64,000 bases of DNA from Trichosphaerium sp. ATCC 40318 (GCA_038496445.1 JALMLS010000368.1:196943-260942), one strand, 5' to 3'. Positions 4,070 to 37,316 are shown, counted from the stretch's first letter. The notes: generated by a model not told the origin, from the sequence alone. Made by a program: numbers and translations.

Positions 4070-5622
4070 ATGTCCAGGAAGCTCGTTCACATACTTGGTG
4101 GAGGAGAATTTGGACTTACGACCGCTATTGAGCTAAAATCAAGAGGCAACAGATAGCACAAGTTAAAGTTTTTCATAAAACACTAACAAAACGTTATTAG
4201 GACATGATGTGAAGGTTTACGAGCGCGATGAAGTCCCATCACCAAAAGCTTCTTCTACAGACATCTCCAAGGTGCATAAACAACTCTAGGACCATCAACA
4301 AGCATTATTGCTGAATCACATGCCTAAAAAAACAAAAAAAAATTGTTAATGCTTTCAGGTTGTACGCATGGACTATGGAGGAAACAAAGCGTAAGACCTG
4401 CTCCTCAACAGAGATAAGATTTTTAAGTTGTGCACTAGATACTTCCGTATGGGAGAAGAATCGATAAAACGCTGGCGCAAATGGAACGGCTTTTGGGGAA
4501 AGAACTGTATCACGAGACTGGCGTAGCGTACTTATCTACCAAGCCAATGGAAGAAAAATCGTTTGAAATGCAAAGTGTCCATGACCTACAAGAAAGTGGA
4601 TATCACGTGGACAGATTGGACGCGTGCGTTTTTGTTGTCACGTGCAGAGTAACGACAATTAATAAGTGAGGTAGACAAAGCATCAAACATAGATTTCCCA
4701 ATTGGAAAGAGTCTGACTTTGTCGATGGGTACTACCACAAGAATGGAGGATGGGCAGAAAGCGGTGAAGTATGATACAAGTAGACATGTCATTCAAATTA
4801 ATGAAACATTTAACTCATTTTTAGGTAATCCGATACCTTGGCAAAACTGCTCGCAATATGGATATTACAATAGAGGAAAATGCTGAAATAGATCGACTTG
4901 CTGTAGAAAAAGGCAAGTTGCGTGGATTTATCATGAAAGATGGCAAGGTAGTTGACAGGTGCGAATGACGAACCAGTTTAATGTTTTACCGTTTTGACAA
5001 CCCCTTTTCACAGTGAAAATGTCATCGTTGCCTCAGGAGCGTGGACTCCAGATATAGTACCACAATTGCGTGAATATATCAAACCAACAGCGCAACCTAT
5101 TATCACATTCAAGAAAGGAATCAATGCATCAGAATTCAGCGATTCTCTCCATCCTGTATTCTTTTCAGATCACGATGTGGGCATGTATGGGTTTCCTGCT
5201 ACTGCTGATGGTACTGTCAAGATTGCAAATCACGGTACTGGATTCACTTATAAATACGGTGAGCCTCTGGTCGAGACAGAAGAGATGAGAGCCATGTTTA
5301 CAGCTTGGATAAAACAAAAAATACCAAAGTTGTTAGCAGCTGAACCGTCATATCGCATTTGCCTCTACTGCGACACACTTGACAATAACTTTTTTATTGA
5401 TCACGTGCCCGATATTGAGGGTGCCATGATAGCGTGTGGTGGTAAGTATTTAACAAACTAACATGTTGTTTTCTAACAACTGAACAAGGCAGTGGACACG
5501 CTTTCAAGTTTGCACCTGTGATTGGTGACATCATTTCTGATGTCTTTGAAGGTAAACCAAACGAATACGCGCCTTTGTTCAAATGGAGAAAAGGAGGGGA
5601 GGTCAGCACATCAAGGAAATGA
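4070..5622 (+). CDS. FAD-dependent oxidoreductase, sarcosine oxidase/PIPOX/fructosyl-amine oxidase family
   Basis: GGGEFGLTTA Rossmann motif, ASSTDISKVVR, VIVASGAW, YGFP, CLYCDTLDNNFFID, GGSGHAFKFAPVIG. Confidence 0.9.
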
Positions 5623-27846: not shown

Positions 27847-28383
27847 AAAAAAAAAAAATCAGTCTTGATCAAAACGCCTTGATACAAGATTAAGATGACA
27901 TGCCCATTTGTAAAATACTGATTCACGAGAACTATCGCGTGTATAGACACTACTTACAGTAACAAAAGTAAAAAAAATTAGAACCCAATTGAGTTATTAA
28001 GGCAGCACTTGAAGGTAATAAAAAATAAAGGAAAAAAAAATGAACAATATCAAGATTTAAATTGTAATGTCGGTGTTTGTCATTGTACATTTTTTGAATG
28101 TCCTACTGTACATTGTTTTTTGTCTCGGTCCCAACAGACTTTTTTTTTTCCACATGTTTTTTTTTTTTTGGTTTGTTCAACAATTCGTTATCATGACCAC
28201 TTCGTCTTTTTTTTTTTTGTATTATTTACAAATAGCCACAAAAATAAATCATCACCAAAAAATCACGGGAAAAAATAGTATCCATGGAGAACCACCTCGA
28301 TTACAAATCGCGGTCTCTTAAGAAAGAATGTGAGCATCAAAAAAAAATCACGTGAAAAAAAGCATGAAATTTCATGGTTCTTA

Positions 28384-31300
28384 CTATTGTTTGTCCTTTG
28401 CCCACTCCTTCAGTTTTGGTGTTGCAGGAAGTTTTCCAGGGCTCATGCCACTCTTGAAGTAAGCTTCGATACCTTCTTTGGTCAACATCCCTTGGGTGTA
28501 ATAGTGGTCGAATGGCATTGTCAAGCGCTCTAATTCAAAAAGTCAATTTAAACAAAAACAATTTTTTTGATTTGTACCTTTGTTCCTGGACTTTGAGTGT
28601 CTGTACCAGTAGATTTGAATGGCTGTGCATAGGGCAGCTTGTGCTTCTGGAGTCTTAAAAAGGAGTTGAGACAAGGAAAGGCAGAAAGAGAAAAAAGAAA
28701 AAAAAGAGTTGTTGTGATTTGTATGTACCTTCAACACAGTAGCAATAAGTGCATCGTATTCTTTTAGAACAGCGACTTCATTATTTGCTAGCTCAGCATC
28801 ATCACTCTTAGCATTTTTACCAACTCGGTCATCAAGGACATAAGTCAATGCATCAAAAATGTTGGTAATAAAAGAGCTGTCTTTTCTTGACGAAGGTGAA
28901 ACATTCTTCTAAACAAAAACTATTAGAAGCTAGAAACAACACAAGGTAGGTAGTATACTAATGCAATGCCAAGGCACGACGAAAACGATGGAGAATCAAA
29001 AGGTATATAGATAGAGGTACAACAAAAAGCAAAATGAATACAGCACCCTACGTTCCCTGGTCCTCACGGACCCAAGTACTGGCAGGGCCATACCATGCTT
29101 ATCTTCGCGGTTCGGAAAGAGACACGGAGTTTTCATGGTTGTATGGCCGTATCCATTAGTAAAGGCGAGATTTTTGAAACTGGTTTGGTCGAAATTGCAA
29201 AAAAACAACTTTTGTGCTATCGCTGCAAATAAACGTACCATGATCCATTCGATGACAGCATCCGCACTTTTTCCTTGTTTAAGGAGATCAGCAGCTGTTT
29301 CTGTTGGTTCTTCTGGTGCTGCATCACTTGCACTATCTAGAATACCATCAAGCTCAAACTCTTCAATGAGTTGATCCAACTGTGAAGGATCCTCCATGAA
29401 CGCCTTCAAGTCAATGCCTTCTTTATTGAGTACTTGTCGTGCAAAATCGAGACCCTATGAATAAATATTAGACCATGGTCACAATACAGCACAAAAACAA
29501 TGAGAGTGTGTCGTACCTTAACATCATAAAGTCGTGTGAAAAATTGGAAAATGTACTTTTGAGATTCCTTAGTTTTGATGTAAGGTTTAAGTTTTGCTTG
29601 TAAGAACTGAACATCAGTAAAAGCGCCAGAAATGTAAATATGGGCATGTGTATTAGCAACTTGCTTCCAAGCCGTTGGTGTGTCCATACGGAACTCAGGA
29701 AAGTTATCAATGAGCATATTCAATCCCTTTAGCCAATTTTCTTTCTTGAACAATGACTGAGATGCAATGTGCTCAAACAACTTTAACACTTTGTCTGTAT
29801 CTGCTCTGCGCTTCATTTCAACCATGAGAGACACGGCTGTTTTTAAAAACTACACGTGAAAGTCAGTACGTTAACACGTGAAAAAAAAATCATGTGTTGT
29901 GTACCAATCCATAAAATTTGGCAGGGATTGTCTTTAGCGTTGTAACAGCACCAGCGTTATCCTTGGCAATTATTTCTTGTACAACAGTTCTGAATAAATG
30001 ATTAGTCTTTAACAAATAAAAACCAAAAAGCAGTGAGGGCGACGTGACTCGAACACGCAACCTTCTGATCTGGAGTCAGATGCACTACCATTATGCTACG
30101 CCCCCTGCTGGATGATTAAATATTGGCCTGGCATAATCCCGGTACCAACTGAAAAGCATTACGAATGCCGTTTTGGTTGTACACCAGTGATTTACCCTGC
30201 ACAACACGAACAAACAACGTACCCAAATGTATCAGCATTAAAAGTGAACTCCTTTTTACGGAATTGTTGACTCTTAGACGAGCCTCTAACTCTTTTACGA
30301 CTCTTTTGGCTGTTGGAGCGTTGAGGCCTTGATTGATTTTCACGAACATCTCCTCTTGGTTGTTGTTGGAAATTTCTCTTCTACAGGTTGAATAAGAACA
30401 CAAAAATGATAAGTTTGTGCTTACCGAGCGCGCATTACCAGTACTTTGGATGGTAGTCCAACCAGAACCATCATTAGTCTTTGTGCGCCTATTTTGACCG
30501 CCACGACTATTACTTCTTGATGCTACAAAAGAAGTTTAAGAAACATGTCAAAAAAAAACCAAAGAGTTAAAAAAACTTACGTTGATTGTTACGTTTATCA
30601 CGGCTATCATTCCTCCTCATAGAAGGTAATTGTGTGCCACGTGAATTAGCCTTTCTCATGCTTGTTGAGGAAGATTTCTTTGTAGGATCGCACCAGTTAT
30701 TCTTACGCAAGGTGATCAAATCATCAAGCATAAAAATAAGACGCTGACAAACAAGTCGTTGGCTGACTAGTTTATTGATGCTTTCAAAGAATGTAGGCAT
30801 ACGCTTAGAGTACTTTGTTTTGTTGAGACGTTCACCTATAAAATTAAGAGTATAAGTAATTTTTACCTTAAGTAAAACGTGTCACGTGAAAAAGTTTTCG
30901 TACCAATTGCAGTTAACAATCTACAGAAATTTTCTATTTCATCTTCATTTGGTTTTTGCCAATCACCCAACAAGCTTCTTAGACAAAAGTCCATAATGCT
31001 AGGCTGTAACATATCCTGCAAGTACAATTGCCCAATAAACTTTACATTTCCAACATTACGTTGTCGGAATTTTACTGCCTGTTCCATGACAGCCAAACGT
31101 GCTTCACCAGTTAATGAATCATCCAATTTTGGTGCAGCTTTTTTGTTTTCAAACTCAGTTTGACATCTGTTAAGCAATAAACGTCTAAAGTCCATAGCCT
31201 AGGAAACAGTACATTAGAAGCTTATTTCTACAAAATTAACGAACGAGTACCTTAGCAGCTGGATCTGCCTTGGCACTATCAGTGACAATCGTCTTGTTTT

Positions 31301-34300
31301 CTAATTTTTTACATAGTTCGGCATATAATACACCATACGTTGGTTCAGTAACGGCCTTATCGTACACAAGGTTGATAATGATTCCAAGCCTGAAGAAAAC
31401 TTTATCAGTATACCGGCGAAATTAAAAAAAATCAAAAAGCAGTGAGGGCGACGTGACTCGAACACGCAACCTTCTGATCTGGAGTCAGATGCACTACCAT
31501 TATGCTACGCCCCCTGCTGGATGATGAAACATTGGCCTGGGACAAACCCGTTACCAAGTGAAAAGCCATCGTACCTGGTCTCATTTTCAATGTCAATGTT
31601 GAGTATATCTTCGCTCAACTTTTCAAAATTATCCTTTGCCAACTTGTTCAAAATAACTTGAACTTGTCTGGTGAGTTTCATATTATCATCCATATTTTTT
31701 GGCCTTGGATTCCATTCTCCTTCACCTGGCTCACGACGTTCTTGAGGGCCTCTACGACCACGTTTGCCTTTGCCACGTGGTGTTTTCCAGCTTCCTCCAC
31801 TCTCTTTGCGACCGCGCTTATCTTTATTTCTCCATCCGCCAGAGTCGTTATTTCTTCCTCTAAAGAACAGTCACTATCAAAAACACGAAATGGAGATAAA
31901 TAAGTTTACAACAAGAAAAAGGTTCAACGCACCTCCTTGATGATGTTGGTCGAGAAAAGTCTGTGCCAACGATATTTTTGATAGCCTCAGTCTTCAACTC
32001 TTCGGGTTGATCAGTGCACAACTATTGAAAAAAAACCGTTAGTAACCAAACAAAAAAAAATGAAAAAAAAATTAAACCTTGGCTAATCACATTGACTGTT
32101 TTAGCGCGTACCTTTTGGAATTGCATCATAAAATTTCTAGAGTACATCTGGCGACCATCACTCGATACTTGAGCACCAGCAGGCGCATCAAAAGGAGAAG
32201 TACTACTCAATAAAGCATTATTAGCAGGTGTTTGATCATCTAGATTAAAATCTCCATCTGCCATTGCTTCCCAATCGTCATCATCTTCTTCTTGCTTATC
32301 TTCAGCCTTTGGTTCCTCTTTAACAGGAGCAGGTTTTGGCTCTTCTTTTGGAGCCTTGACTTCTTCCTTTCTAGCACGTTTTGGCTTATCAGAATACGCA
32401 TCAAATGAAGCTGCAGAGTACTCTCCCTTATCAGCTGCCTTAAGAATATCCTTCAACTTTCTTTTCTTAACTGGAGGAACATAAGGCTCAACCTTAGGCT
32501 CGACCTTTGGCTCAACCTTTGGTTCTTCCTTTACAGGCGTAGCCTCAGCTGGTTTAGGTTCCTCTTGTTTTTCAACAGGCTTCGCTGAAGCAGGTTCAGG
32601 TTCAGGCTCCTCTGTAGCTGGCTTAACGTCCTCTGTCTTGACAGCTTCAGGTTCAGGCTTCTCTTCCTTTTGCTCGTCAACGTTTGGTTTTGGTGCTTCT
32701 TCTTTCTTTGGCTCCTCTACCACTGGTTCAACCTTAACTGGTTCTTCAGGTTTTGGTTCTACCGGCTTCTGCTCAACTGGTTTTGGATCTTCAACCTTTG
32801 GTGTAACCTGTTCTGGTTCAGCAGGTTTTGTAGGTTCAACAGTAGGCTTGACAGGTTCAGGCTTCTCTGTTGATACTTCCTCAACTGCCTTAGGTTCCTC
32901 CACAACTGGCTTGCTAGGCGCTTCAACATTCTCTACTGGTGCAGTCTCCTTCTTTGGTTCAGGTGTAGGCTCAACTGGTTTGCTAACAACCTTTTCGACA
33001 GGCTCCTGTGCCTTTGTAGGTGTTGGAGTAGTATCCTTGACTTCCACAGGTGGTTTAACCTCTTTCTTAGGCGCTTCTTTCGCTACTGGCTTAACAACTT
33101 CTTTTGGTGCCTCCTTTGCAGGTGTAGGCTCAGCAGCAAGCTGTGCAACAGCTTCTCTGAACTGAGCAGCTACCAAAGACGGTGAAGCTTTTGGTGCAGC
33201 AACAACAGGTTTAACACTCTTGGCGACACTATCCACCGGCATACCAATAGAAACAGCAGGAGACCGTTTAGATCCGCCATTTGATTCAGGTTTATGACCA
33301 TTCGTTTGCTTTCCTCCTTGGCTTGGCGCTTCAGGTCCTTTTTCAAGACGAGGTTTAAACGTTGAAGCTTGTGAACCATTGCTTGCCTTGTTGGCTTTAC
33401 CTGATAGTTCAGGTAGTACACCTATAGTTATTTTAAGTACGTGGGCTTTTCGTATAAATAAAAGGGTACCTCCTGGCGTGCGTGGTGAGTTTTGCTTGTT
33501 ATCTTTTTTAAGATTTGCAGAATCAGCAAGGTTGATGGATTTACCAGTTGTAGGGTCTATAATTGGTATTGCTTTGCTCTTTTTTCTGGGTTTTGGTCTA
33601 GCAGGGGAATGCGGCTGATTGTACGTTGTATTACTGTATGCAGCGCTATACCTTAAAGTCAGAAATAAAATGGCAACATACAGTGATAGTAATTGCGAAA
33701 TGGATTGTTTTCTTCACTAATAAAAAACTCAAGAATCTGTATGGTGTTACAAAACGTACCGAGCTCCAGCTGCGTAAGGGTTACCGTTATAAGCTGCTGG
33801 TCCACCGTAAACCATTTGCTGTTGCCAACCACCTTGTGGGTAGTACTGGCGACCATATTGTCCATAACCATAACCTGGTTGAGGTGCACGTGCTCCTCCT
33901 GTATTTTTAAAGTTAGGAAATGTAGAGACGATAATTACAAGCAAAAAAATTAGTTATGTACCAGCCATAGGTTGTGCTTGAGGTCGAGGATGTCCACGCA
34001 TGTTACCTGTATCACAATGAGCAAGAGTTGGTAAAAATAAACGCAGTAGCCACAGTAAAAACCCACCCCCCTTTAAAGCTAAATCTGTTCGCTTAACGTA
34101 CCAGCTTGGTTTCCACCATGGTGTGGCACAGCTTGTGGATTACCCTGATTTTGATACTACAAAGATGTTAATAGCCTAACGCGCAACAAAAGGAGGATGT
34201 TCAGATTTAAAAGCTTGTCAAAAAGAGTACTGTAATAGGAAAGAAAATTCAAACGATGAATCAGCGAAGATCGTTCATTTAAAAAGAAAAAAACGATTGG

Positions 34301-35742
34301 ACCATCAAAGTGTAAACTCAGATTATACCTGATACGCTGGACGATACTGTTGATATTGTTGAGGGTATCCTGGATAGTTTTGTGCAGGGTTACGTTTATA
34401 TGGAGCGAATGCCTTTAAAGTGAGTGAGATTACAAATTAAAAAAATCGATTACAAATCGAAAAACTTTTTTATATTTTGATGCTGGTCAGACATCCAGAA
34501 TAATCAAAAAAAATATCCACAAAATAAAATATTTTTGGCTTAGATTTCGCCAAATTAAGAGAATATTGATTGCATCATAATCTTGAAGGGAATATTCGCA
34601 CACCTTTGTTTTTTGCTGCTCCTCAAGTGATGGTGGCGCTGAACTAGGGCGGTGCATGCCTGCTGTATGAGAATTCACAGCAGGTTGCATGGGTTGTGGT
34701 GATACTGGGTTAGAACCTTGGCCTGTCACTTTTTGAGGAGCTAATTCTTGACCCATTGGAGCATTAGACCCACGAGCAGGCGTCATACCAGCTGTAGGCG
34801 TATTACGAACACCCTGAGACGGCCTACCGCCTTGTGGACCACCCATGCCGTATTGAGGCTGTGGTTGACGACGACCTGCGTGAGATGGCGCAGCAGCGTT
34901 GTAACCCATCTGTTGAGTTGGTCTCATCGGTCCAGGATCTTTAAAACAAGGTTAGAAAAGCATTTTTCACTTTCTTTTTTTTTGGTTTTTTTTTTTCATG
35001 TGGTCGTTTTGTACGACGGTTTTTGCAATCGCCCATGCAGTAGTAAAGTTGTACGAAGGCGTATGAATTAATTTTATGTTTTTCCCAAGAGGTTTGGTTC
35101 CTGTGCATCGAAAAAATCGCAAAAAAAAACTGGCGATAACAGGTGGTTTTAGTGTTGCGGTGTTGAGGTTTAAAAACAACCAAGGTTTCGCGTTTCAACA
35201 AATAATAATTTGTACGCTTGGCGCTTTTTCGTACTTTGTGGTGATGCATGACGATGTGCGTTGCTGCCTCTGCCTACTCCACCAGGGAAATGAGTTCCAT
35301 GTTGTCTAGGGTTTACGCCGCTACCTGCATTGAACACTCAGCGATTTAAAAACAAGCCAGGGCGGAGATAAAAGAGAAAAGCAAGATCGTACGCGTTTTT
35401 CCGTCGCGTGTTGTTGTATGACGAGGTGGGGTCGCTCCGCGGGATATGTGGTTGTTAAGTGTAAATAAAAGAAGGTACAAAGCCCAAGAAAACTGATTAA
35501 AGGGCAAGAAAGCAAAATCTCTTAAAAGTGGCTGAAAGCCTGTGTTTATCACGTATTAATTGACCACATATAATATTGATCACCGTAAATCCCACAGGTC
35601 AACCAGTAGTTGAGAATTTGCTGTTGGGTAAATTGAAAGGATACTTATTGTTACCAGAACCACGTCCGACGCGTTTGTTAGCGTAACCGCCAGATGCCCT
35701 TGGTCCTCGTGTTGTTTTTTTTCCTTGTGTGGTATTTGACAT
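28384..35742 (-). CDS. EIF4G: Eukaryotic translation initiation factor 4G (eIF4E-binding motif, MIF4G, MA3, W2-like end)
   Basis: YSRNFMM (YxxxxL-phi-like), VILNKLAKDNFEKL, YDKAVTEP.YG..YAELC, DFRRLLLNRCQTEFE, GNVKFIGQLY, RLIFMLDDLITLRKNNW. Q/P/G-rich N-terminus and an EPK-rich linker. Start may extend to about 35910. Confidence 0.93.
29036..29154 (-). rRNA. 5S rRNA: 5S rRNA gene inside eIF4G intron 28909-29238
   Basis: 119 nt GGATACGGCCATAC..CCGAAC.GCGAAG.TAAGC..AGTACT.GG..GGGAA..GTGCTGTATTC. Helix I pairs GGATACGGC with GCTGTATTC. Followed by T-runs (Pol III terminator). Confidence 0.93.
30034..30105 (-). tRNA. trnW: tRNA-Trp(CCA), copy 1, in eIF4G intron ~29990-30222
   Basis: GGGGGCG/CGCCCTC acceptor stem, TCTGA-CTCCAGA-TCAGA anticodon arm, GTTCGAG T-loop, TTTTT terminator. 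Confidence 0.96.
31443..31514 (-). tRNA. trnW: tRNA-Trp(CCA), copy 2, in eIF4G intron 31390-31574
   Basis: Identical 72-nt sequence to copy 1, followed by CTGCTTTTT. Confidence 0.96.
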
Positions 35743-36168: not shown

Positions 36169-37316
36169 TTAAAACATGAGTATGAACAACATAATAAATA
36201 CACCCATGATGAGTACCATACGTGAAAGCATTTGCCTTTGTTCTTCGGCTGGTGTTAATGGTTGAGCATTTTGCATACCATCCTTTGTAGAAAGAGTGAG
36301 TACAAACGAAGAGTGCGTAAGAAAATTTTAACGACAAAAATAAAAAATAAAAAAACACGTTAAAATTATGTCAACGGTAATCGTCGGAAGTATAATTCCG
36401 CGATGAGGCCCTTTTGGCGATTTTGATGACTGTATAATTTTTTTTTTGTTTGTTATTCCCAAAGATTTAGTGCTCACACAGCGTCATCGGCAAGTACGAG
36501 CGTTGAGAATTGCGGTAGGAGGTTTTTTATCAACGCGTAAATGTACTTTTACAAACGGTTTTTAGAAAAGGCAAAACGTACAAAAGCCATTTCAAAGCCT
36601 GGGAACAGTCCTGCAGAAAAAGATACATTGCCAAATTGTATCGTTGGACCATTATAAGTGAATCCCAGAGGATGAACAAAGTTACCGTGCTGTCTGCCCT
36701 TTTGTAGCGAAGCAATCAGTATTTGGTAAATCAACGTAATAAATAATTATAAAATACCCTGTTTGGAATGGCTCTTGGTGCTGGTGGTCGTTGTCCAGTT
36801 GGTCTTGATGGTATTGTGTCCCTGTTTAGGTTTGATGAGCACTCGAGTTAACATGTTCTAAATGACAGCCAGTCACTTGGTATTTTTACACGTACCTTGG
36901 GTCCTTCGACGCTGACCCATGTCCGTATATTGGAATTAGTGTTGTTTTATCTGGAATACCCGCTTTGCATACGGGACATGTGGCCTCTCCTTGGCATACT
37001 TCCGTCCACTGTAAGTAAGTGTAAGAATAATAAAATAACAAAACAGAAAATTAACTCCAACGCTCGCTCACCCGATATATACACGGCCAACTATTAAACC
37101 GTTAGTTACCGACAAAGAAAGTTACAATTTAAACGTGTACCAGTACAAATGACCACAAACAGTCACAACTGGATCGCAAGCTGAATCCAGGCATATATTG
37201 CATACGAAAGTAGTGTTTTTTGGCTCTTCACCTTCATCCTTTTTTTTCTCGTTTTGAGGCGTATTACGACGTTTCAAGCCATTCGCGTTGGCATCTGTTG
37301 GTGTATGTGCTTCCAT
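36169..37316 (-). CDS. RNF5: RNF5/RNF185/RMA1-like tail-anchored C3HC4 RING E3 ligase
   Basis: [55 protein letters not shown], C-terminal hydrophobic LSRMVLIMGVFIMLFILMF*. Confidence 0.88.

What the first reader, a model, noticed from the sequence alone, without database searches (positions are those of the whole stretch)
28909..31574. eIF4G gene hosts a 5S rRNA gene and two tRNA-Trp genes in three introns
Seen: introns here are mostly ~50 nt, but three eIF4G introns are enlarged (about 330, 230 and 185 nt). Each contains a complete Pol III-type gene on the same strand as eIF4G: 5S rRNA (29036-29154) and tRNA-Trp(CCA) twice (30034-30105, 31443-31514), each followed by a T-run. Known: intronic snoRNAs in translation genes are common and 5S genes are dispersed in some protists, but a rRNA plus tRNAs nested in one translation-factor gene is unusual. 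Inference: this may be a nested translation-machinery locus in which Pol II and Pol III output are coupled, or in which the RNAs are excised from the pre-mRNA.
Basis: partly seen in the sequence, partly recalled or inferred. Interest (0 to 1): 0.82.

Follow-up and report, generated by a model that had tools for sequence, protein, structure and literature searches.

The report
5S and tRNA genes inside eIF4G introns
One translation-factor gene (eIF4G) of an amoeba-like protist really does carry a 5S ribosomal RNA gene and two tryptophan tRNA genes inside three of its introns, all pointing the same way as the host, but this looks like one example of a genome-wide habit and not a special link with eIF4G.

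Summary
Rfam and ARAGORN call a full-length 5S rRNA gene (29035-29154) and two identical tRNA-Trp(CCA) genes (30034-30105, 31443-31514), all on the minus strand. They are the only RNA-family hits in the 64 kb window.

They lie in introns of 330, 233 and 185 nt of a 21-exon minus-strand gene (28384-35742). That gene has an eIF4E-binding-like motif, MIF4G and MA3. Exon-by-exon homology places both tRNA introns inside one gene. The 5S intron rests on splice signals, frame and codon usage only.

Each RNA gene ends at a T-run. The tRNA bodies are identical while their flanks differ by about 15%, so they look like live, autonomous Pol III genes.

Unchecked notes of this scan report the same sense-in-intron layout for 5S and tRNA genes in many unrelated genes of this genome, so the scan has found this before on other DNA.

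Intron-nested tRNA genes are known in nematodes. I found no report of intron-nested 5S genes. My verdict is a new variant of a known kind, of moderate interest.

The parts
28384..35742 (-). Host gene, eIF4G-like: 21 exons and 20 GT..AG introns, ATG near 35742, stop at 28384-28386
   Evidence: Exons 8-21 (33645 to the stop) read as one frame with a single terminal stop. The frame also stays open through exons 3-8; exons 1-2 and the start codon were set by hand. Pfam finds MIF4G and MA3. Exons align in order to the eIF4G-like protein P0003.
32115..32144 (-). eIF4E-binding-like motif (Y-x4-M-M, followed by Q-F-Q) at the end of the long exon
   Evidence: Read from the translation. Its likeness to the canonical Y-x4-L-hydrophobic motif of eIF4G is from my own knowledge and was not tested.
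30581..31859 (-). MIF4G domain spread over four exons (31575-31859, 31251-31389, 30904-31198, 30581-30835)
   Evidence: The exons hit Pfam PF02854 profile positions 2-30, 36-63, 69-152 and 157-203 in order. The same order is seen in outgroup loci and in P0003.
31390..31574 (-). 185-nt intron hosting tRNA-Trp copy B, inside the MIF4G domain
   Evidence: GTACGA..CAG ends and a CTGAT branch-like site 15 nt from the 3' splice site. With this segment removed, the flanking exons are exactly contiguous in L009 (4797 to 4819) and in P0003 (219 to 226).
31443..31514 (-). tRNA-Trp(CCA), copy B
   Evidence: 68.4 bits, anticodon CCA.
31515..31566 (-). Conserved 52-nt block directly upstream of tRNA copy B
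   Evidence: 45 of 52 positions identical to the block upstream of copy A. The core 26-mer occurs only at these two places in the window, against 0 expected. No structure beyond shuffled sequence.
31433..31442 (-). Terminator-like stretch with a T5 run just downstream of tRNA copy B
   Evidence: These ten bases are identical in both copies.
29990..30222 (-). 233-nt intron hosting tRNA-Trp copy A, between the linker exon and the first MA3 exon
   Evidence: GTACGT..CAG ends and a CTAAT branch-like site 12 nt from the 3' splice site. It lies between exons 6 and 10 of the table, which map to P0003 374-457 and 676-781.
30034..30105 (-). tRNA-Trp(CCA), copy A, identical to copy B
30106..30157 (-). 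Conserved 52-nt block directly upstream of tRNA copy A
30024..30033 (-). Terminator-like stretch with a T5 run just downstream of tRNA copy A
29517..29989 (-). MA3 domain (exons 29905-29989 and 29517-29849)
   Evidence: Pfam PF02847 profile positions 39-111, E 1.3e-6. Aligns to P0003 676-781, E 1e-14.
28909..29238 (-). 330-nt intron hosting the 5S rRNA gene
   Evidence: GTACGT..TAG ends, a CTAAT branch-like site 14 nt from the 3' splice site, phase 0 on both sides. There is no homology or read evidence for this intron.
29035..29154 (-). 5S rRNA gene, full length
   Evidence: RF00001, 93.7 bits, model positions 1-120.
29023..29034 (-). T4 then T5 runs starting at the first base after the 5S gene (terminator-like)
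28384..28908 (-). Three C-terminal exons beyond the 5S intron (133 codons plus stop). A W2-like tail is expected here but not shown.
   Evidence: Codon usage is positive only in the predicted frame (+0.18 against -0.67 and -0.79 bits per codon). The first in-frame Met is at residue 90 of 133. The atlas look-up gives HEAT/TPR-like hits only. No Pfam or PDB hit exon by exon.

Best explanation
These are three ordinary, self-contained RNA polymerase III genes (one 5S rRNA, two tRNA-Trp) lodged in the host's direction inside three spliceosomal introns of the housekeeping gene eIF4G, in a very gene-dense protist genome.

How it most likely works, all inferred: Pol III starts each gene from its internal promoter (A and B boxes in the tRNAs, the internal control region in 5S), possibly helped by the conserved upstream block of the tRNA units. 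It stops at the T-run directly behind each gene. Pol II reads through all three, and the spliceosome removes them with the introns, whose donor, branch-like and acceptor signals are intact.

Why there: introns of a constitutively active gene offer open chromatin and some of the little non-coding space in this genome. Copies facing the host transcription would hinder it and be lost, which would leave the same-direction bias.

The second tRNA copy arose by DNA-level copying of a unit of about 150 bp (upstream block, tRNA and terminator) into another intron 1.4 kb away.

Shown here: the genes, their position, orientation and end signals, and the one-gene status of the host for the two tRNA introns. 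Not shown: expression, the polymerase used, and the cause of the orientation bias.
For: The 5S and tRNA genes are canonical and full length.

A T4 or T5 run begins within 5 nt of each 3' end. The background for a T4 run starting within 6 nt in this gene's other introns is 0.20 per site.

The tRNA bodies are 72/72 identical, while the flanks differ at 11 of 75 positions. If the bodies were neutral, no difference would have a probability of about 1e-5 (my arithmetic). Both copies are therefore kept by selection or gene conversion.

The homology between the two copies includes 52 nt upstream of the tRNA. A Pol III retrocopy would not carry that, so the duplication was at the DNA level. The flanks have no RNA structure.

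Host introns keep GTAxG donors, CTRAY branch-like sites 12-15 nt from the acceptor, and YAG acceptors. The one-gene status across both tRNA introns is supported.

The window is compact: 83% lies under stop-free stretches of at least 60 codons, and only one gap exceeds 400 nt.

An active Pol III unit in an intron lowered host expression when antisense but not when sense (PMC5358760). Unchecked scan notes report the same layout in unrelated genes of this genome.
Against: The T-runs are only mildly unlikely by chance (about 0.04 for two independent units), because these introns are T-rich.

The orientation bias rests on three genes here, of which only two are independent events, plus unchecked notes from readers who tend to record the striking cases.

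One note describes an intergenic tRNA-Lys cluster, so nesting is not universal in this genome.

The 5S intron has no homology support. I found no conserved TATA-like element upstream.
Confidence: 0.68

Rival explanations
1. Host-derived maturation. The RNAs, above all the tRNAs, are also or mainly released from the eIF4G pre-mRNA or its excised introns by RNase P and RNase Z and other nucleases, as intronic snoRNAs and the Arabidopsis GUT15 tRNA-like RNA are. Output would then follow Pol II transcription of the host.
For: All three genes are in sense orientation, which this route requires. Scan notes say sense nesting recurs across the genome. In C. elegans, where only 56% of intronic tRNA genes are sense, the authors used that lack of bias to argue against such processing (PMC4999229). 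A tRNA-like RNA processed from a Pol II intron is documented (PMC6152437).
Against: Terminator-type T-runs sit directly at each 3' end, and a conserved upstream block flanks both tRNA copies. Neither has a role in this route. To my knowledge no eukaryotic pathway cuts 5S rRNA out of a long precursor. Cleaving a tRNA out of an unspliced intron would destroy the host mRNA. Nothing was tested with RNA data.
Confidence: 0.12
2. One reading: a dedicated translation-machinery locus. The genes sit in eIF4G specifically so that production of rRNA, tRNA and the translation factor is co-regulated.
For: Three of three Pol III genes in 64 kb lie in this one gene. As a rough post hoc estimate, the chance is about 0.01 if two independent units were dropped at random into the window's non-coding DNA in either orientation. 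In C. elegans the host promoter does influence an intronic tRNA-Trp gene (PMC4999229). Several hosts named in the scan notes are translation or mRNA-surveillance genes.
Against: Other hosts in the notes are unrelated to translation, such as CAF-1 p60, SIN1 and a CTD phosphatase. Distant eIF4G loci have no Pol III genes. The two tRNA genes are one duplicated unit and not independent arrivals. eIF4G simply offers many introns: 20 of them, 2.6 kb in total. One tRNA species and one of many 5S copies would be a weak regulatory lever.
Confidence: 0.07
3. Silent passengers. The copies are intact-looking but transcriptionally inactive duplicates, tolerated in introns and of no functional consequence.
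For: 5S and tRNA genes are multi-copy families with fast turnover: 52% of nested tRNA genes are conserved between two Caenorhabditis species (PMC3342880). No expression data exist here.
Against: The tRNA bodies are identical despite about 15% flank divergence. The 5S scores 93.7 bits over its full length with almost no non-standard pairs. Terminators are retained.
Confidence: 0.1

Closest known systems
Intron-nested tRNA genes of Caenorhabditis (Wang & Ruvinsky 2012, PMC3342880; Sagi et al. 2016, PMC4999229)
   Same: [quoted passage not shown] Host promoters influence the expression of the nested tRNA.
   Different: In C. elegans only 56% of intronic tRNA genes are in the host's orientation, so there is essentially no bias. 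Those nested-gene surveys covered snRNA, snoRNA and tRNA genes and list no nested 5S gene. Here all three genes are sense, one is a 5S gene, and scan notes suggest a strong sense bias across the genome (unchecked).
Pol III-transcribed MIR nested in the first intron of mammalian Polr3e (Yeganeh et al. 2017, PMC5358760)
   Same: A Pol III unit sits inside a Pol II intron and interacts with host transcription. In that study orientation decided the effect on the host reporter.
   Different: That unit is a SINE in antisense orientation that acts as a roadblock. Here the units are bona fide 5S and tRNA genes in sense orientation, the arrangement that had no measurable effect in that study's reporter.
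Dispersed single 5S rRNA genes of Acanthamoeba castellanii, Neurospora crassa and Schizosaccharomyces pombe (reviewed in PMC1635290)
   Same: The 5S genes are scattered singly and are not in tandem arrays or linked to the rDNA.
   Different: That review describes them only as scattered and says nothing about introns. I found no paper reporting nuclear 5S genes inside spliceosomal introns.
Intron-encoded small RNAs processed from host transcripts (intronic snoRNAs; Arabidopsis GUT15 tRNA-like RNA, PMC6152437)
   Same: A stable small RNA lies in sense orientation within an intron of a Pol II gene, often a translation-related host.
   Different: Those RNAs lack their own promoter and terminator; the GUT15 RNA cannot be transcribed autonomously (abstract). 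The genes here carry Pol III-type terminators and canonical internal-promoter-bearing sequences.

Membership tests
5S rRNA (Rfam RF00001) | Covariance-model score above the curated gathering score, over the full model | tested here: met
   93.7 bits against 38, model positions 1-120 of 120, E 5.6e-19.
5S rRNA (Rfam RF00001) | Pol III termination signal (T-run) at the 3' end | tested here: met
   A T4 run starts at +1 and a T5 run at +7. Chance is about 0.2 per site in these introns.
5S rRNA (Rfam RF00001) | Transcribed and incorporated into ribosomes | not testable with these tools
Nuclear tRNA-Trp(CCA) | tRNA covariance-model score above gathering, cloverleaf, anticodon CCA | tested here: met
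   68.4 bits against 29 for both copies, with no non-standard pair flagged. ARAGORN calls anticodon CCA.
Nuclear tRNA-Trp(CCA) | Under selection as a functional gene | tested here: met
   0 of 72 differences in the body against 11 of 75 in the flanks. Selection or gene conversion is needed to explain this.
eIF4G (host gene) | MIF4G (HEAT-1) domain | tested here: met
   PF02854 at E 7e-14 on one exon. Four exons cover profile positions 2-203 in order.
eIF4G (host gene) | MA3 (HEAT-2) domain downstream of MIF4G in the same protein | tested here: met
   PF02847 at E 1.3e-6, above its cut-off. Both domains align in order to the single protein P0003.
eIF4G (host gene) | eIF4E-binding motif Y-x4-L-hydrophobic, N-terminal to MIF4G | tested here: inconclusive
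   A Y-x4-M-M-Q-F-Q motif lies at 32115-32144, about 130 residues before MIF4G. I judged it by eye against a consensus I know from memory.
eIF4G (host gene) | C-terminal W2 (HEAT-3) domain | tested here: inconclusive
   No Pfam or PDB hit exon by exon. The atlas look-up gives only generic HEAT/TPR-like neighbours. The joined model was not searched.
Intron-nested Pol III genes (Caenorhabditis type) | RNA gene wholly inside a spliceosomal intron of a protein-coding gene | tested here: met
   For the tRNA introns this rests on the gene model plus homology across the junctions. For the 5S intron it rests on the gene model and codon usage only. There is no read evidence.
Intron-nested Pol III genes (Caenorhabditis type) | Transcribed by Pol III independently of host splicing | not testable with these tools
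   Only sequence signals are available: internal-promoter-bearing canonical genes and T-runs.
Intron-processed small RNAs (snoRNA or GUT15 type) | No transcription signals of their own; sense orientation is obligatory | tested here: inconclusive
   The sense orientation is met. However, terminator-like T-runs and a conserved upstream block are present, which argues against this class without excluding it.

The most novel reading that the evidence does not exclude
In this protist, Pol III genes, including single-copy-style 5S rRNA genes, are housed systematically and almost always in sense orientation inside introns of constitutively expressed Pol II genes. That layout would be functional: Pol III output either depends on host Pol II transcription (chromatin opening, or shared initiation or re-initiation), or part of the 5S and tRNA pool is matured from spliced-out introns. 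Either way, this would be a genome-wide Pol II to Pol III coupling not described for 5S rRNA in any eukaryote.
Probability: 0.15. Interest if true: 0.8.

Novelty: new variant of a known kind. Interest (0 to 1): 0.5.

Why it matters
Where Pol III genes sit, and how they coexist with Pol II transcription, is mostly known from yeast, animals and plants. There, 5S genes lie in arrays, next to the rDNA, or scattered between genes.

A genome in which 5S and tRNA genes live in introns with a strong same-direction bias would be a natural experiment on polymerase traffic: co-directional against head-on. It would also bear on whether host transcription licenses Pol III genes.

This locus packs three such genes into one well-defined host, with a pair of diverged duplicates that mark which flanking bases are conserved. 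That makes it a convenient test case for reporter, ChIP and 5'-end experiments.

If the pattern is only a by-product of extreme gene density, it is still a useful rule for annotating this lineage: look for Pol III genes inside enlarged introns.

Tried and rejected
1. RNA reads. The look-up of sequencing runs listed runs holding 23-49% of the sampled words. All later work was done beside them.

2. Word-based protein searches with the MA3 exon and with the 511-aa exon were both blank. Only proteins of 0.55 to 1.75 times the query's length are candidates, so this says nothing about full-length kin.

3. The exhaustive protein search with the MA3 exon gave three hits. Two are translated tandem repeats (P0001, P0002) and were discarded. 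P0003 is a real eIF4G-like protein, but it has no locus on record, so relatives' introns could not be inspected.

4. Nine metagenome eIF4G loci are only 36-42% identical and intron-poor. They are useful for showing exon continuity but not for the age of the introns or the conservation of nesting. They hold no tRNA or 5S gene.

5. W2 domain: exon-by-exon Pfam, PDB and atlas searches were uninformative.

6. An automatic exon-chaining script read through introns and even through a tRNA. I replaced it with hand-checked junctions.

7. The idea that the conserved tRNA upstream block is an extra structured RNA was rejected: its fold is no better than shuffled sequence.

8. The idea that whole introns were copied (intron transposition) was rejected: homology between the two tRNA introns covers only the unit from about -52 to +23 around the tRNA, not the intron ends.

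9. The idea that the tRNA units are SINE-like retrocopies was rejected: the shared sequence extends upstream of the tRNA, and the tRNA is followed directly by a terminator with no tail.

10. Literature searches for intronic 5S genes found nothing relevant.


Full report
**What is there.** Rfam finds exactly three RNA genes in the 64 kb window, all on the minus strand:
- a full-length 5S rRNA at 29035-29154 (93.7 bits against a gathering score of 38, model positions 1-120);
- two tRNAs at 30034-30105 and 31443-31514 (68.4 bits each against 29).

ARAGORN calls both tRNAs tRNA-Trp with anticodon CCA. Permissive re-scans of the rest of the window, which avoided the places named below, add nothing.

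**The host gene.** The minus strand from about 35742 (ATG) to 28384-28386 (stop) reads as a 21-exon gene.
- The last 14 exons join into one open frame with a single terminal stop through 13 GT..AG introns of 90, 73, 185, 52, 68, 58, 44, 233, 55, 62, 330, 75 and 48 nt. The three large ones are exactly the RNA-bearing introns: 31390-31574, 29990-30222 and 28909-29238.
- The seven 5' introns are longer (about 330, 296, 191, 172, 95, 63 and 114 nt) and hold no detectable RNA family even at E<=1. 'Enlarged intron' is therefore only a local contrast, not a rule.
- Donors are GTAxG-like. 11 of the 20 introns, including all three hosts, have a CTRAY branch-like site 12-17 nt from a YAG acceptor (12-15 nt in the three hosts).

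**Is it eIF4G, and is it one gene?** Exon by exon, four consecutive exons hit the Pfam MIF4G profile at positions 2-30, 36-63, 69-152 and 157-203, and a later exon hits MA3 at positions 39-111. The upstream tRNA intron therefore lies inside the MIF4G domain.

- Distant eIF4G loci from metagenomes (36-42% identity) encode the same segments in the same order and frame. In L009 the two exons flanking the 185-nt segment abut exactly (4797 to 4819).
- The one exhaustive protein search returned a real eIF4G-like protein, P0003. The exons of the table align to it in order: exon 3 to residues 111-219, exon 4 to 226-254, exon 5 to 268-360, exon 6 to 374-457 and exon 10 to 676-781. Both tRNA introns are thus internal to one MIF4G-plus-MA3 gene.
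- A Y-x4-M-M-Q-F-Q motif about 130 residues before MIF4G (32115-32144) resembles the eIF4E-binding motif. This rests on my own knowledge of the consensus and was not tested.

**The 5S intron** has weaker support, because P0003 and the outgroups end before it. The evidence is as follows:
- canonical splice signals, with phase 0 on both sides;
- 133 further codons through two more canonical introns;
- codon usage that is positive only in the predicted frame (+0.18 against -0.67 and -0.79 bits per codon, with all control introns negative);
- no in-frame Met before residue 90 of those 133.

A W2 domain could not be called exon by exon.

**RNA evidence.** None could be obtained. 

**Anatomy of the nested units.**
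- Each gene sits between the donor and the branch site. The distances from donor to gene, the gene length, and the distance from gene to acceptor are 60/72/53 nt (tRNA copy B), 117/72/44 nt (tRNA copy A) and 84/120/126 nt (5S).
- Each gene is followed at once by a T-run: T4 at +1 and T5 at +7 for 5S, and T5 at +5 for both tRNAs. In this gene's other introns a T4 run starts within 6 nt of a random position 20% of the time, so this fits Pol III terminators but is only mildly significant.
- The two tRNA units share more than the tRNA. A 52-nt block directly upstream is 45/52 identical, and the first 23 nt downstream are 19/23 identical. Beyond that the introns are unrelated.
- The core of the upstream block occurs nowhere else in the window and has no structure beyond shuffled sequence.
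- With 11 of 75 flank differences, zero differences in the 72-nt body would have a probability of about 1e-5 under neutrality (my arithmetic). Both tRNA genes are therefore maintained by selection or gene conversion.
- Because the shared sequence includes DNA upstream of the tRNA, the copy was made at the DNA level as a unit of about 150 bp. It is not a Pol III retrocopy, and it is not a whole-intron copy.

**Context.** The window is very compact. 83% lies under stop-free stretches of at least 60 codons, and only one non-ORF gap exceeds 400 nt. Introns make up much of the available non-coding DNA. This gene alone has 2.6 kb of intron in 7.4 kb.

Notes of this scan on other pieces of the same genome, which follow-up agents describe as a marine amoeba-like protist, report 5S genes nested in sense orientation in introns of UPF2, an SMG7-like gene, SIN1, ABCE1, NMD3, CAF-1 p60 and a CTD phosphatase. 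They also report tRNA genes (iMet, Gln, Ser, Ala) nested likewise. Two follow-up reports state that one such intron is truly spliced and that they found no published report for 5S.

These are unchecked AI notes, and readers tend to record the striking cases. One note describes an intergenic tRNA-Lys cluster. Even so, they changed my reading: the scan has found this layout before on other DNA, and eIF4G is most likely one host among many. Distant eIF4G loci carry no Pol III genes.

**Mechanism.**
- My best reading (about 0.68) is that these are autonomous Pol III genes that use introns of a constitutively active gene as a safe, open harbour. Co-directional copies survive because head-on copies impede the host. 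In a mammalian reporter, an active intronic Pol III unit reduced host expression when antisense but not when sense (PMC5358760).
The report's rival section gives the evidence for and against each.
- Shown: the genes, their position, orientation and end signals, selection on the tRNAs, and the one-gene status for the tRNA introns.
- Inferred: the polymerase used, expression, and the cause of the orientation bias.

**Comparison with what is known.**
- Intron-nested tRNA genes are well documented in Caenorhabditis: 264 of 608 tRNA genes are nested (PMC3342880). Only 56% of the intronic ones are sense, and the host promoter influences an intronic tRNA-Trp gene (PMC4999229).
- Scattered single 5S genes are known in Acanthamoeba, Neurospora and S. 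pombe (PMC1635290).
- Five searches found no paper describing nuclear 5S genes inside spliceosomal introns, or a strong sense bias of nested Pol III genes. That library lacks most subscription-journal papers.

**Verdict.** I class it as a new variant of a known kind, because of the intronic, sense-biased placement that extends to 5S. This locus is a compact, useful example and not a unique system. Interest is 0.5.

Noticed in passing
whole window; for example 28348-28353, 29855-29860, 29875-29880, 30883-30888: The palindrome CACGTG occurs 61 times in the window against about 8 expected from base composition, including twice in one 55-nt eIF4G intron. Other scan notes report the same excess genome-wide.
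   Followed up: partly
30106-30157 and 31515-31566 (-): The conserved block upstream of both tRNA-Trp genes contains an acceptor-like TTTTCAG/TTTTCAC followed 3 nt later by a donor-like GGTAMCGGG. It could be chance, a trace of the locus the unit was copied from, or a protein-binding element. Using that donor-like site instead of the intron's donor in copy B would shift the frame by 20 nt.
   Followed up: partly
32112-33645 (-): The long eIF4G exon encodes about 300 residues of K/P/E/V-rich low-complexity sequence (repeated KPVEP-like units) between the Q/G/Y/P-rich N-terminus and the eIF4E-binding-like motif. It has no Pfam hit and no relative in the word search.
   Followed up: no
about 36190-36300 (-): Directly upstream of eIF4G on the same strand, a short ORF ends in a hydrophobic tail (a tail-anchored-protein look). 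The spacer to the eIF4G start codon is only about 450 nt, which illustrates the tight gene packing (sequence printed).
   Followed up: no
33646-35654 (-): The seven 5' introns of eIF4G are much longer (63-330 nt) than the 3' ones, yet they hold no Rfam family at E<=1. Whether they hold unannotated small RNAs such as lineage-specific snoRNAs is open.
   Followed up: partly
P0001, P0002: The top two hits of the exhaustive protein search are translations of long tandem DNA repeats from other organisms. They matched the MA3 exon through many weak repeated stretches, which is a reminder that summed multi-stretch scores can mislead.
   Followed up: yes
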